A stretch of 64,000 nucleotides of DNA from Octopus bimaculoides (taxonomy: Eukaryota), in NCBI RefSeq assembly GCF_001194135.2, contig NC_069003.1, positions 5,087,963 through 5,151,962 of the forward strand, given 5' to 3'. The notes below the pieces were generated by a model. It was given only the letters and a program-made list of their open reading frames with translations. It did not search any database and had not been told where the DNA came from. The stretch's first letter is position 1. Each line of letters opens with the position of its first letter. This document shows positions 3,642 to 48,300 of the stretch, piece by piece. The position numbers and the translations under genes were made by a program.

Positions 3642-4284
3642 ACGCATCATCCCCCATTAGCTGTTCGTTGCTTCATTTGACCAGAACATACGCAGACGAC
3701 ATTGCTTCAAGCTTCTTCTTTTCTCTTTTTTTTTTTCTTTTTTGACTTTTCCTTTTTCTTCTCCTCTTCGGGTGGCCTTCATTTCCGCCTCCTCTTCCTT
3801 CTTCTCCAGCATTTTTTCTATTTTTCCTTTTCTTTTTCTTCTCCTTCTTCAACTCTTTTATTTTCTTTCTTTCTTTCTTTCTTCTCCGCCTTCTTTTTCC
3901 TTCTTTTCTTCTTCCTTTACCGTCTTATTCGTTTTCCGTCTTGTTTTTCTTCTTTCTTCCGTTCCACTTCTCTTTTCTCTTTATTTGGCCCTTCCTTTCT
4001 TTCATTTTCTTGTTGTTGTTGTTGCTGTTGTTGTTGTTGTTGTTGCTGTTGTTGTCATTCTTCTTCTTCTTCTCCTCCTCCTCTTTTTTTATAAGAATGA
4101 TAATTATGAAGAGGATTATCATCATCATCATCATCATCATCATCATCATCGTCATTATTATTATTATTATTATTATTATTATTATTATTATTATTATTAT
4201 TATCATTATTATTCCAAAGAGGGATGAACCAATACTTGGGTAAGTGAACAGGAGCAAGGGTTAAGAATTTATTCAGAGGGGATA

Positions 4285-4440
4285 AATATGGCGCCGTTTC
4301 TTTACGGCAGCTGTGTACAACGTCGCAATCAAATTAACAGATCGGTGGACTCTAACCAAAATACCCGAAACTAAAATAAAGTTAAACCGGATGGAGGCGT
4401 TGTTTCGTCCCCTAACCACGCCTCGTGAACTTCCGGTTGT
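4285..4440. promoter_or_regulatory. CpG-containing promoter-like patch (YY1-like and ETS motifs)
   Basis: AATATGGCGCC at 4285-4295 and ACTTCCGG (ETS, CCGGAAGT on the minus strand) near 4429-4436, within non-repetitive sequence. Confidence 0.3.
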
Positions 4441-45300: not shown

Positions 45301-48300
45301 CGTGCATGTACATATGCATATATATATATTATGTATATGTATATATATGTATATATATATTGTGTATACATATATATATATATATATATATGTATACAAA
45401 TATGTTTGTCACATATTTCAACTGCTAAAGTTACCGTGGAGCTACACTGCAGTTACCGTGGAGAAATTCCTCTCTTGTGGTAAGAGGTGTGAAAACACCT
45501 AGTTCATTCAGTGTTGCCATCTCTCGGGAATCTCAGACATCGATGTTTCGAGTTTATTGACTCTTGTCGATGAGATGTACCTAAGAGAGGCAACTCTGGA
45601 CGAACTAAATAAAGATTGTAGCTTTTTCTATAATTCAGTCAACAATATTACTCATTCGTGTTTTGTGGATCACAGTTATGTCCATAGCTTTTATATTTTT
45701 CAGAACGTTTCTTATGGACGTTCTGAACAGTTCCATCTTCTTCAAACTTCCACATAACTTAGCGGTTCGGTAAAAGAGAATCGATACAAGATAGATAGAT
45801 AGATAGATAGATAGATAGATAGACAGATAGATAGATAGATAGATAGAAAGATAGATAGATAGATAGATAGATAGATAGATAGATAGATAGATAGATAGAT
45901 AGATAGATAGATAGATAGATGCAGGGAGTTGTCTATATTGACAATCTACACCTGGATAGTTAAACTGCAATCTTTTCTGCGGCACTATTCGTGACGCACA
46001 TGGGGTAATTTTGGGGAGAGATACGGAATTTGCTAGTCGATATAAATTTGGAGTTGCTGATTTTACTTATGTGATATTTGATGTTGCATGGTCAAATATA
46101 CATGGGTTTATTAGCATTTTCAAATTTATAATTTTGAATATGATGCTGAAGAGTGAAATGAATTTTTATAAAATTCTAATCACGAAACGTCGTACAGGAT
46201 TAACTAACGGCAGGTTTGTTCTGTTTATTTTTCCTCTTTTATTCTATGTGAGCCATGAATATCGCTATCCGTTGGAGACTTAATTATAGTTAGAATTAGT
46301 AGTTTTAACTGTTATTTCTAAATTTTCAGTATGTTGGTGAAGCAACTTTTGCTGATCCCTATATTATGTTTATATATATATATATATATATATGTAGATA
46401 TGTATATACACAATGTGCATGCATACACACGCATACACACACGCATACACACACTCATACATACATATACAGGCACGCATACATATATGCTTATACATAT
46501 GCACATGTAGCATTATATATTTATTTGATTTTATGTGCCTTCGTGTGGGTTTATAAGTGTATATACAAGTATGTGAAAGTGTGTGTTTCTGTATCAAAGT
46601 GCATTTATGTATCCGTGTGCTCATGTATGTGTATGTGTTTGAGTGCTTCCAGTCTGTGTGTGTACGTATGTTTTATATGCCTGTATATACATGTGTGTGT
46701 GTACGTCTGTGTTTGAACAAGGCTGTGCATTGCAAAAGAAAAATGAATGTGTCGAGAGAAGAGAAAGAAACAAAATGAAGGTAAGAGGGGTTATTTTGGT
46801 TTTCCTTTTCTCTTTCTGTTTTTTTTTTCTTTTTCTTTTGATTGGCAAGAATGTAGCAATTTGTGTGTGTAATGAAACAGAAGGCTGCAATAACGGAGAT
46901 GGGCCTGTGTTGACATTGATAAGTTAAGTGACTGTCATCAGGCGATTAACTACGACAACTTGACAATATTGCTGGACGCCATTACTGAGCAGACGACACT
47001 CATTTTCTCTTCCCTCTTCCATTCCTACGCTTACCATTTCTCTATCTCTCTCCCTGTCCTTCTTCTCTCTTCTTTCTCTATCTCTTTCCCCTTCCTTCTT
47101 TCTCTCTTCTCTCAATTCTTTTCTCGTTTAGACATCATTCCGAATGTGTATTTCTTTCCCCTTGTTATTTATCTTTCCCTTTTGGTTTACTCTTTCTTTC
47201 TCCCTACTTTCTCTTTTCTCATACATTCTTACTCTTTATATTTTTCTCCTCTTCTCCTGACTCTTTCTCTTGCTGTTCCTTACTCATTCTCCCTTTCATG
47301 CTTCTTTCTTTCCCTCTCTATCAACATTCTCTCTTTCTCTATCTCTATCTATCTATCATTATTTATTTATTTATTCTTTCTTTCCATCTATCCATCTATC
47401 ATCTATCTATCTATCATCTATCTATCTATATAACTATCCATCTATCCATCTGTCTATCTATCGGTCTAAATATCTATCTATCTATCTATATATATATATT
47501 TTTTTATTTTTATGACGTTGACCACTAACGTGGACATTTAATGTGCTAGAAATAGATCACATCTTGTGTCTAAAAAGACCTAAATTGTTCTCAATAATAT
47601 AATAATAATAATTTAATAATAATAATAATATATATATATATATATATATATATATGTGNNNNNNNNNNNNNNNNNNNNNNNNNNNNNNNNNNNNNNNNNN
47701 NNNNNNNNNNNNNNNNNNNNNNNNNNNNNNNNNNNNNNNNNNNNNNNNNNNNNNNNNNNNNNNNNNNNNNNNNNNNNNNNNNNNNNNNNNNNNNNNNNNN
47801 NNNNNNNNNNNNNNNNNNNNNNNNNNNNNNNNNNNNNNNNNNNNNNNNNNNNNNNNNNNNNNNNNNNNNNNNNNNNNNNNNNNNNNNNNNNNNNNNNNNN
47901 NNNNNNNNNNNNNNNNNNNNNNNNNNNNNNNNNNNNNNNNNNNNNNNNNNNNNNNNNNNNNNNNNNNNNNNNNNNNNNNNNNNNNNNNNNNNNNNNNNNN
48001 NNNNNNNNNNNNNNNNNNNNNNNNNNNNNNNNNNNNNNNNNNNNNNNNNNNNNNNNNNNNNNNNNNNNNNNNNNNNNNNNNNNNNNNNNNNNNNNNNNNN
48101 NNNNNNNNNNNNNNNNNNNNNNNNNNNNNNNNNNNNNNNNNNNNNNNNNNNNNNNNNNNNNNNNNNNNNNNNNNNNNCTCTCTCTCTCTCTCTCTCTCTC
48201 TCTCTCTCTCTCTCTCTCTCTCTCTGTACCTCACACATATATACCTATATACACACACACACACACACCGTATTTCTTTCAATGATATCGCAAGGATTTT

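What the first reader, a model, noticed from the sequence alone, without database searches (positions are those of the whole stretch)
3692..46999. Recurrent 12-mer AGCAGACGACAC in unrelated unique flanks: candidate undescribed cis-element
AGCAGACGACAC occurs exactly at 19194, 22547, 34127 and 46988 (+). An 11-nt match lies at 27498-27508 (-), a 10-nt match GCAGACGACA at 3692, and a variant CCAGACGACA at 44959-44968 (-). The flanks share no homology and none lies in a recognised repeat. A rough expectation (assumed ~36% GC, ~54 kb non-N, both strands) is ~0.002 copies, so four exact copies is unlikely by chance even allowing for motif choice. The motif retains a CpG. It overlaps a Smad-type CAGAC and a Mad-type GRCGNC, but a 12-bp length also suits a C2H2 zinc-finger protein, a family known to be hugely expanded in octopus. 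Function is inference.
Basis: partly seen in the sequence, partly recalled or inferred. Interest (0 to 1): 0.75.

Follow-up and report, generated by a model that had tools for sequence, protein, structure and literature searches.

The report
Recurrent 12-base word in octopus DNA
A 12-base word occurs four times exactly, plus once with one mismatch, within 28 kb of repeat-rich octopus DNA; this is more than chance predicts and each copy borders a purine- or pyrimidine-rich tract, but nothing yet shows what it does.

Summary
AGCAGACGACAC is exact at 19194, 22547, 34127 and 46988 (+), and 11/12 at 27497-27508 (-). Each copy lies inside a gap-free contig. The weaker variants (3691, 44958, 63353) occur at chance frequency.

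- **Over-representation is real for this window.** Markov expectations are 0.003-0.014 copies. The look-elsewhere-corrected expectation is about 1e-4 to 5e-4 per window. That is not negligible if tens of thousands of windows were scanned.
- **The flanks are unrelated.** They share no homology, second box, hairpin, ORF, Pfam domain or Rfam hit, and the copies form no consistent TIR pairing.
- **New finding: every copy borders an asymmetric tract.** All five have a strongly purine- or pyrimidine-biased tract of 70-490 nt on their 3' side, of either polarity, and sit 330-740 nt before an assembly gap.
- **The cluster is local.** Fetched Octopus loci contain no exact copy. One-mismatch relatives occur in a 14-nt minisatellite upstream of rhodopsin and in an abundant tRNA-derived SINE. 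Only copy 22547 resembles that SINE.

The Smad/Mad composite reading fails on box spacing, and the zinc-finger idea is untestable here. My best guess, at low confidence, is a protein recognition site. A cryptic repeat fragment is almost as likely. Interest is modest.

The parts
19194..19205 (+). Exact copy AGCAGACGACAC, embedded in a CT-rich stretch
   Evidence: Lies in contig 18522-19610, 405 nt before the next gap.
19206..19275 (+). Pyrimidine-biased tract directly 3' of copy 19194 (70 nt, 76% Y)
22547..22558 (+). Exact copy. It is the right arm of an imperfect 29-nt palindrome (ACGTGTCTGCCGAGCTAAGCAGACGACAC). It is the only copy whose flanks align in register with the second tRNA-derived SINE.
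   Evidence: Hairpin -8.2 kcal/mol, z = -1.3, not significant. SINE alignment score 28, equal to the 95th percentile of the null.
22559..22818 (+). Purine/A-rich tract directly 3' of copy 22547 (260 nt, 72% R)
27497..27508 (-). One-mismatch copy AGCAGACGACAG on the minus strand. It is the same variant as the unit upstream of rhodopsin in O. vulgaris and O. sinensis.
27367..27496 (-). Purine-biased tract (as read on the minus strand) directly 3' of copy 27497 (130 nt, 70% R)
34127..34138 (+). Exact copy. It shares a 14-mer, AAGCAGACGACACA, with copy 22547.
34139..34238 (+). GA-rich tract directly 3' of copy 34127 (100 nt, 77% R)
46988..46999 (+). Exact copy
47000..47489 (+). CT-rich tract directly 3' of copy 46988 (490 nt, 82% Y)
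3691..3702 (+). Two-mismatch variant CGCAGACGACAT, followed by a CT-rich tract. This mismatch class is at chance frequency, so membership is doubtful.
44958..44969 (-). Three-mismatch variant TCCAGACGACAT. Chance-level class, membership doubtful.
63353..63364 (+). Two-mismatch variant AGCAGACGATAT with no biased tract next to it. Probably chance.

Best explanation
The word AGCAGACGACA(C/G) is a short, sharply bounded sequence element clustered in this roughly 28-kb stretch of Octopus DNA. The source is probably O. bimaculoides, in a gene-poor region rich in microsatellites and SINEs.

I think it is most likely a recognition site for a sequence-specific DNA-binding protein. On this reading the site has been kept intact while the DNA on both sides turned over.

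**Shown:**
- Five copies, with borders that are sharp on both sides.
- Flanks that are unrelated to one another.
- A strongly purine/pyrimidine-asymmetric tract on the 3' side of every copy.

**Inferred:**
- The identity of the copies is maintained by selection for binding.
- The neighbouring asymmetric tracts matter as double-stranded features, for example as nucleosome-poor or GAGA-type factor-bound DNA. Their polarity relative to the motif is not fixed (3 purine-rich, 2 pyrimidine-rich), which fits no retroposon-tail model.

Which protein reads the word, and with what effect (enhancer, insulator or boundary), is unknown.
For: - **Over-representation survives look-elsewhere correction.** The expectation is 1e-4 to 5e-4 per window, and 0 of 400 simulations matched it. 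This is the only isolated complex 12-mer with at least 4 copies.
- **Borders are sharp and flanks show null-level similarity**. There is no second box and no GAC-slippage series.
- **All five copies have a 3' tract at least 72% R or Y.** The probability is 0.11 per side for comparable positions, giving 2q^5 = 3e-5, post hoc.
- **The cluster is local.** There are 0 exact copies in 44.8 kb of independent O. vulgaris DNA, against 3.3 expected at window density (P = 0.036). There are 0 in about 0.39 Mb of O. vulgaris transcripts.
- **The core recurs upstream of rhodopsin.** It lies about 460 nt before the ATG in three Octopus species.
Against: - **No functional evidence.** I have no conservation data for the window copies, no chromatin or binding data, and no gene in the window for the element to regulate.
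- **The identity pattern looks more like copying than selection.** Real binding sites usually show graded degeneracy. Here there are 4 identical copies, 1 one-off, and then only chance-level variants.
- **The tract association was noticed after looking at the data.**
- **The rhodopsin-locus core proves nothing.** It sits in DNA that is about 89% conserved overall between species.
- **Scan size matters.** If the scan read tens of thousands of windows, a few such clusters are expected by chance.
Confidence: 0.32

Rival explanations
1. The copies are fragments of a dispersed repeat: either the tRNA-derived SINE that carries AGCAGAAGACAC/AGTAGAAGATAC, or an undescribed family or shared SINE/LINE terminal box. 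The rest of each copy has been lost or is unrecognisable.
For: - A SINE copy in O. vulgaris has AGCAGAAGACAC, one substitution from the motif, at a fixed position. The consensus of 7 copies reads AGTAGAAGATAC.
- Copy 22547 aligns to that SINE in register, with score 28 at the 95th percentile of the null.
- Octopus genomes are about 66% repeats, with SINEs at 11.6% (PMC13282606).
- The octopus RTE-class LINE carries a microsatellite straight after its ORF (PMC9115989). A 'short conserved head plus low-complexity tail' is therefore a known layout.
Against: - Four of five copies show null-level similarity to the SINE and to each other.
- Neutral decay that erases the flanks cannot leave 12 of 12 bases intact in four copies.
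- 5' truncation would give copies of different lengths, not five copies ending at the same base.
- Tail polarity is inconsistent (3 R, 2 Y).
- There is no match to the flanks in 65 kb of other Octopus DNA.
- The core is absent from the LINE paper's supplementary sequences.
Confidence: 0.28
2. Chance coincidence, picked out afterwards in a compositionally patchy window.
For: - The per-window look-elsewhere expectation of 1e-4 to 5e-4, multiplied by about 42,000 windows of a 2.7-Gb genome, gives 5-20 such windows.
- The fifth copy (1 mismatch) alone is expected 0.2 times.
- Two- and three-mismatch variants are at chance level.
- Strand bias is not significant.
Against: - 0 of 400 simulated windows reproduce it.
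- The independent association of all five copies with 3' R/Y tracts (3e-5) and with nearby gaps (0.008) is not expected for random hits.
- One-mismatch relatives turn up twice in 44.8 kb of other Octopus DNA, against 0.17 expected.
Confidence: 0.12
3. Target-site duplications or an insertion hot spot. Pairs of copies flank inserted elements, and the word is the duplicated target.
For: - The exact copies are direct repeats with unrelated inner and outer flanks, as target-site duplications are.
- Copy 19194 is followed by a T-rich stretch that could be the A-tail of a minus-strand retroposon ending at 22546.
Against: - Two or three independent insertions would need the same 12-bp target.
- Repeated insertion of a site-specific element would leave homologous element ends next to the copies, and none are seen.
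- No LINE coding remnant lies between the copies.
- Inverted pairs (22547/27508 and 44958/46999) face opposite ways, so a TIR model is also inconsistent.
Confidence: 0.05
4. Assembly or library artefact, such as an adapter remnant or gap-filling error.
For: The assembly is fragmented (30 N runs), and all copies lie 332-734 nt from a gap on their 3' side.
Against: - Copies are internal to contigs, not at their ends.
- No published text contains the 12-mer.
- It matches no adapter I know (own knowledge).
- The core is present in two gap-free assemblies of other Octopus species.
Confidence: 0.03

Closest known systems
BMP-responsive silencer/activating elements of Drosophila (Mad GRCGNC box plus Medea GTCT(G) box)
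   Same: The word contains GACGAC, which fits GRCGNC. Its reverse complement contains GTCTG.
   Different: Here the two boxes overlap by three bases. In the known elements they are separated by a fixed 5-nt spacer (own knowledge). No BMP target gene is in the window, and binding was not tested.
Binding sites of long-footprint zinc-finger proteins that occur as dispersed, near-identical words (for example CTCF-type or TE-borne ZNF sites)
   Same: A 12-bp, highly specific word that recurs with sharp borders. Octopus has a large C2H2 repertoire (the family is discussed in the cephalopod genome papers listed).
   Different: Such sites are normally degenerate, or they ride on a recognisable TE. Here the copies are identical and their flanks are unrelated. 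No reader protein is known.
Retroposon 3' ends with microsatellite tails (RTE-class LINEs and their SINEs)
   Same: A short conserved head followed on one side by low-complexity DNA. An RTE of this layout is described in octopus (PMC9115989).
   Different: There is no shared sequence upstream of the head, no spread of truncation points, and tails of opposite polarity.
Octopus tRNA-derived SINE carrying AGCAGAAGACAC / AGTAGAAGATAC
   Same: It differs from the motif by one to three substitutions, and copy 22547 aligns in register.
   Different: Four of five copies show no similarity to this SINE beyond the word.
GA-tract-associated recruitment motifs (Drosophila MSL recognition elements with CLAMP, and GAGA-factor-flanked Polycomb response elements)
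   Same: A specific word next to purine/pyrimidine-asymmetric tracts, locally clustered. GCCAT (the Pho/YY1 core) lies within 60 nt of 4 of 5 copies.
   Different: This is purely an analogy. The GCCAT enrichment does not survive multiple testing (p about 0.3), and no such system is known in molluscs.

Membership tests
BMP silencer/activating element (Mad + Medea composite site) | A GRCGNC (or GGCGCC) Mad box | tested here: met
   GACGAC at motif positions 5-10 (sequence)
BMP silencer/activating element (Mad + Medea composite site) | A GTCT(G)/AGAC Medea box separated from the Mad box by a 5-nt spacer | tested here: not met
   CAGAC occupies positions 3-7 and overlaps the GACGAC box. No GRCGNC lies 5 nt from GTCTG in the varying flanks.
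BMP silencer/activating element (Mad + Medea composite site) | Bound by Smad proteins and BMP-responsive | not testable with these tools
   Needs EMSA, ChIP or a reporter assay
TIR DNA transposon / MITE end | An inverted partner at the other end, in a consistent orientation, with target-site duplications | tested here: not met
   The only inverted pairs are 22547(+)/27508(-), which converge 4.96 kb apart, and 44958(-)/46999(+), which diverge 2.0 kb apart. Their geometries contradict each other and no convincing duplication is present.
LINE/SINE 3' end with tail | Shared element sequence upstream of the terminal box, with variable 5' truncation | tested here: not met
   Upstream flanks are at null-level similarity, and all copies end at the same base.
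LINE/SINE 3' end with tail | A tail of constant polarity 3' of the box | tested here: not met
   A biased tract is present in 5 of 5 copies, but it is purine-rich in 3 and pyrimidine-rich in 2.
Octopus tRNA-derived SINE with (AAT)n/(TA)n tail (copies at 735-1055, 13570-13766 and others) | The motif lies within a copy or the consensus of the SINE | tested here: not met
   No copy overlaps a SINE copy. The 3' region of the SINE reads ...GCTAACGAttCTGCCAGCTCGCC....
Second tRNA-derived SINE (…GCTATAGTAGAAGATACTTGCCC…) | Flanks of the motif align to the SINE in register | tested here: inconclusive
   Copy 22547 does (score 28, equal to the null's 95th percentile). Copies 19194, 34127, 46988 and 27497 do not (scores 17-23, null median 20).
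Tandem repeat / minisatellite | Head-to-tail copies | tested here: not met
   The window copies are single and 3-13 kb apart. A 14-nt unit containing the core is tandem 2x in O. vulgaris and 3.3x in O. sinensis upstream of rhodopsin.
Structured RNA or protein-coding motif | Rfam, tRNA or Pfam match, a shared frame, or a shared fold | tested here: not met
   No Rfam hit lies over any copy, no tRNA, no Pfam domain, and no shared hairpin.
C2H2 zinc-finger protein binding site | Specific binding by a zinc-finger protein | not testable with these tools
   Only the length (12 bp, about 4 fingers) is compatible.

The most novel reading that the evidence does not exclude
The word is a lineage-specific recruitment or boundary motif. 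It would be read by one of the expanded octopus zinc-finger proteins, placed at the edges of purine/pyrimidine tracts, and clustered in particular chromosomal domains. That would resemble the way GA-tract-associated motifs mark domains in flies.
Probability: 0.08. Interest if true: 0.65.

Novelty: new member of a known kind. Interest (0 to 1): 0.3.

Why it matters
Little is known about cis-regulatory vocabulary in cephalopods. If this word proved to be a conserved, protein-bound site, it would be a concrete entry point: a probe for pull-down of its reader, possibly one of the lineage-expanded zinc-finger proteins. It would also link such sites to the very abundant low-complexity tracts of octopus genomes.

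If it proves to be a repeat fragment or a coincidence, it is a useful caution. In a genome that is about two-thirds repeats, a locally recurring oligomer is weak evidence of function.

Tried and rejected
- **Flank homology.** Anchored extension, blastn and banded local alignment found none. tblastx gave only microsatellite noise.
- **Second co-occurring box.** No 6-8-mer co-occurs. GCCAT is the top 5-mer but is not significant after correction.
- **Coding.** No Pfam domain in the 10 most complex ORFs. None of 10 ORFs is in the protein collection.
- **RNA.** Rfam at gathering threshold found nothing. The e-value scan gave only microsatellite pseudo-miRNA hits, none over a copy. No tRNA was found and no hairpin is shared.
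- **GAC slippage or microsatellite origin.** AGCAGACAC occurs 0 times and there are no 3xGAC forms.
- **CpG-island context.** The flanks are not CpG-enriched.
- **Equal contig lengths.** The contigs holding copies 22547 and 46988 are both 3237 nt but share no homology, so this is coincidence.
- **The first SINE's 3' end as source.** Rejected.
- **Literature.** No paper contains the 12-mer. Supplements of three octopus repeat or LINE papers contain no copy.
- **Getting more DNA of this genome.**
  - The homolog search with window ORF 33385-33729 and the squid GST search gave no octopus protein.
  - The SINE core is absent from metagenome contigs.
  - The rhodopsin query and the representative search gave loci L001-L004.
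  - Two further relatives were only short metagenome contigs.
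Full report
**1. The observation**

AGCAGACGACAC is present exactly at 19194, 22547, 34127 and 46988 on the + strand. It is present with one mismatch (AGCAGACGACAG) at 27497-27508 on the - strand. Dinucleotide shuffles give 0.21 matches at up to 1 mismatch, and none of 100 shuffles reach 5.

The two-mismatch class is at chance level, with 7 found against 2.9 expected. I count 4 exact copies plus 1 near copy as the signal.

The window has 54,069 read bases, 38.8% GC and 30 N runs. 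Each copy lies inside a contiguous contig, 332-2566 nt from the nearest gap, so no copy depends on continuity across a gap. Spacings and relative strands do depend on the scaffolding.

**2. Is it more than chance?**

- Markov expectations for the word are 0.003 (order 0) to 0.014 (order 5).
- Of 584 12-mers with at least 4 copies, 41 are of high complexity. Forty of those belong to one SINE family. This word is the only isolated one.
- In 200 + 200 simulated windows (orders 3 and 5), no word of comparably low expectation reached 4 copies.
- The analytic look-elsewhere expectation is 1.2e-4 to 4.5e-4 per window.

This is convincing for one window. A scan of a whole 2.7-Gb genome would still meet 5-20 such windows by chance, so the size of the scan matters.

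**3. Anatomy**

The flanks of the copies are unrelated. Anchored extension, blastn (word 9, +-600 nt) and banded local alignment (+-150 nt; mean score 23 against a null of 24) all give null-level similarity. Beyond the word, three copies share only an A at position -1, and copies 22547 and 34127 share a 14-mer.

The following were all negative:
- A second co-occurring 6-8-mer.
- A shared hairpin.
- A GAC-slippage series.
- CpG enrichment in the flanks.
- A Pfam domain in nearby ORFs.
- An Rfam or tRNA hit over a copy.

Inverted pairs have contradictory geometry, which argues against terminal inverted repeats.

The 60 nt on the 3' side of all five copies is at least 72% purine or at least 72% pyrimidine. 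For comparable positions this happens on a given side with q = 0.11, so 2q^5 = 3e-5. That figure is post hoc and needs a hindsight discount.

The tracts run 70-490 nt. They are purine-rich for 22547, 34127 and 27497(-), and pyrimidine-rich for 19194 and 46988. In motif orientation, all five copies also lie 332-734 nt upstream of an assembly gap (p about 0.008). The word therefore sits at the entry to blocks of low-complexity DNA.

**4. Where the window comes from, and related sequence elsewhere**

A homology search with octopus rhodopsin and its cluster members gave the rhodopsin locus in three species:
- O. vulgaris (L001)
- O. bimaculoides GCA_001194135.2 (L002)
- O. sinensis (L003)

The 20-mer core of the window's main tRNA-derived SINE occurs in L001 and L002. 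L002 shows the same mixture of 10-N and longer gaps as the window. The window is therefore Octopus, probably O. bimaculoides.

A profile-free search with window ORF 33385-33729 found 32 relatives. One is an O. vulgaris hypothetical protein, and it gave an independent locus, L004.

None of these loci contains the exact 12-mer. In 44.8 kb of independent O. vulgaris DNA, 3.3 copies would be expected at the window's density (P(0) = 0.036). About 0.39 Mb of O. vulgaris transcripts in a paper's supplement also contains none, although matches spanning line ends would be missed. The cluster is therefore local, not a uniform genomic property.

One-mismatch relatives occur twice in the O. vulgaris loci, against 0.17 expected.

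(a) **A minisatellite upstream of rhodopsin.** About 460 nt upstream of the rhodopsin ATG, the 14-nt unit GCAGACGACAGAAA is tandem 2x in O. vulgaris and 3.3x in O. sinensis. It is single and diverged (ACAGACGACAAAAA) in O. bimaculoides. The surrounding DNA is about 89% identical between species.

(b) **A second tRNA-derived SINE.** AGCAGAAGACAC lies at a fixed position in this SINE. A consensus of 7 copies reads ...GCTATAGTAGAAGATACTTGCCC....

Only window copy 22547 aligns to that SINE in register, with score 28, equal to the 95th percentile of the null. The other four are at null level. The +-250 nt around the window copies has no match in 65 kb of other Octopus DNA.

**5. Mechanism**

Retroposon-type models predict shared upstream sequence, scattered truncation points and tails of one polarity. 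These models cover a LINE/SINE 3' box plus tail, as in the octopus RTE whose ORF is followed directly by a microsatellite (PMC9115989). None of the three predictions is met.

Neutral decay of a repeat cannot keep 12 of 12 bases in four copies while erasing the flanks. Target-site duplication would need the same target several times.

What fits best, though weakly, is a recognition site kept by selection. It lies next to asymmetric tracts whose polarity does not matter, which suggests a property of the duplex or of chromatin.

Against this reading:
- The copies are identical rather than graded.
- No gene is in sight.
- No functional data exist.

My estimates are: recognition site about 0.32, cryptic repeat fragment about 0.28, chance about 0.12, target-site or hot-spot models about 0.05, artefact about 0.03. 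The remainder is unassigned.

**6. Comparison with known systems**

The Smad/Mad composite reading fails its defining spacing. The zinc-finger idea rests on length alone. GCCAT (the Pho/YY1 core) lies within 60 nt of 4 of 5 copies and is the top-ranked 5-mer. With p = 8.6e-4 over several hundred tests it is only a lead.

**7. Verdict**

This is a real local over-representation with a newly noted structural context. Its function and origin are unresolved, and it is partly shadowed by a SINE that carries a near-identical word. Interest is modest until genome-wide counts and orthologous alignments are done. Both are simple computations with the public Octopus assemblies, but they were out of reach of the tools here.

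Noticed in passing
window 735-1055, 13570-13766, 21064-21245(-), 23647-23863, 25444-26007(-), 41510-41569(-), 42158-42325(-), 49945-50003(-), 58203-58375: These are copies of a tRNA-derived SINE family (core GAGTTCAAATTCCGCCGAGG) ending in ...GCTAACGAnnCTGCCAGCTCGCCGCCTT plus an (AAT)n or (TA)n tail. Three copies lie head to tail at 25444-26007. The family accounts for 40 of the 41 complex 12-mers with at least 4 copies.
   Followed up: partly
window 16955-17097, 11147-11184, 33275-33312; L004 18676-18845: A second tRNA-derived SINE is present (sense strand ...GGTTCCGGGTTCAGTCCCACTGCGTGGCA...). Its antisense carries AGTAGAAGATAC or AGCAGAAGACAC, one to three substitutions from the motif.
   Followed up: yes
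L001 9526-9553, L003 9541-9586, L002 ~9468-9481: A 14-nt minisatellite, GCAGACGACAGAAA, lies about 460 nt upstream of the rhodopsin start codon. Copy number differs between Octopus species: 2 in O. vulgaris, 3.3 in O. sinensis, and 1 diverged unit in O. bimaculoides.
   Followed up: partly
window 33385-33729 (+): This is a stop-free 115-aa stretch with 32 relatives in the representative library. The best is O. vulgaris hypothetical protein CAI9737591.1 at 50% identity. No Pfam domain was found. It looks like a relic of a mobile-element ORF. From memory it resembles the cysteine motif before GIY-YIG nucleases of Penelope-like elements, which I did not verify. It lies about 400 nt upstream of copy 34127, but no such ORF is near the other copies.
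   Followed up: partly
window: within 60 nt of copies 22547, 34127, 46988, 27497: GCCAT/ATGGC (the core of Pho/YY1 sites) is the most enriched 5-mer near the copies, present at 4 of 5. The window holds only 60 copies in total. Uncorrected p is 8.6e-4, which is not significant after correction.
   Followed up: partly
window 22528-22558: This is an imperfect 29-nt palindrome, ACGTGTCTGCCGAGCTAAGCAGACGACAC, whose right arm is the motif. Its left arm resembles both SINE families. The hairpin is not significant (z = -1.3).
   Followed up: partly
window, edges of all 30 N runs (e.g. 1060-1086, 16525-16600, 19380-19610, 34500-34518): Assembly gaps are flanked by microsatellites ((TA)n, (CA)n, (GA)n, (GATA)n). 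The mix of 10-N and sized gaps matches the O. bimaculoides GCA_001194135.2 locus fetched here.
   Followed up: partly
window 4060-4240, 26290-26550, 35170-36400, 36900-38710, 40810-41100, 43770-44090, 50100-50980: Long trinucleotide-type tracts ((ATC)n, (GAT)n, (GAC)n, (GGT)n, (GAA)n) produce ORFs of hundreds of codons that are not genes.
   Followed up: no
window, e.g. 61600-61672, 59897-59965, 32806-32883: There are 261 sub-threshold Rfam matches to mir-297, mir-466, mir-3149 and similar families. All fall on TG/TA microsatellites, all score below the gathering threshold, and they are artefacts of composition.
   Followed up: yes
window 20056-23292 and 44422-47658: The two contigs that each carry an exact copy are both exactly 3237 nt long. 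They share no homology, so this is coincidence.
   Followed up: yes
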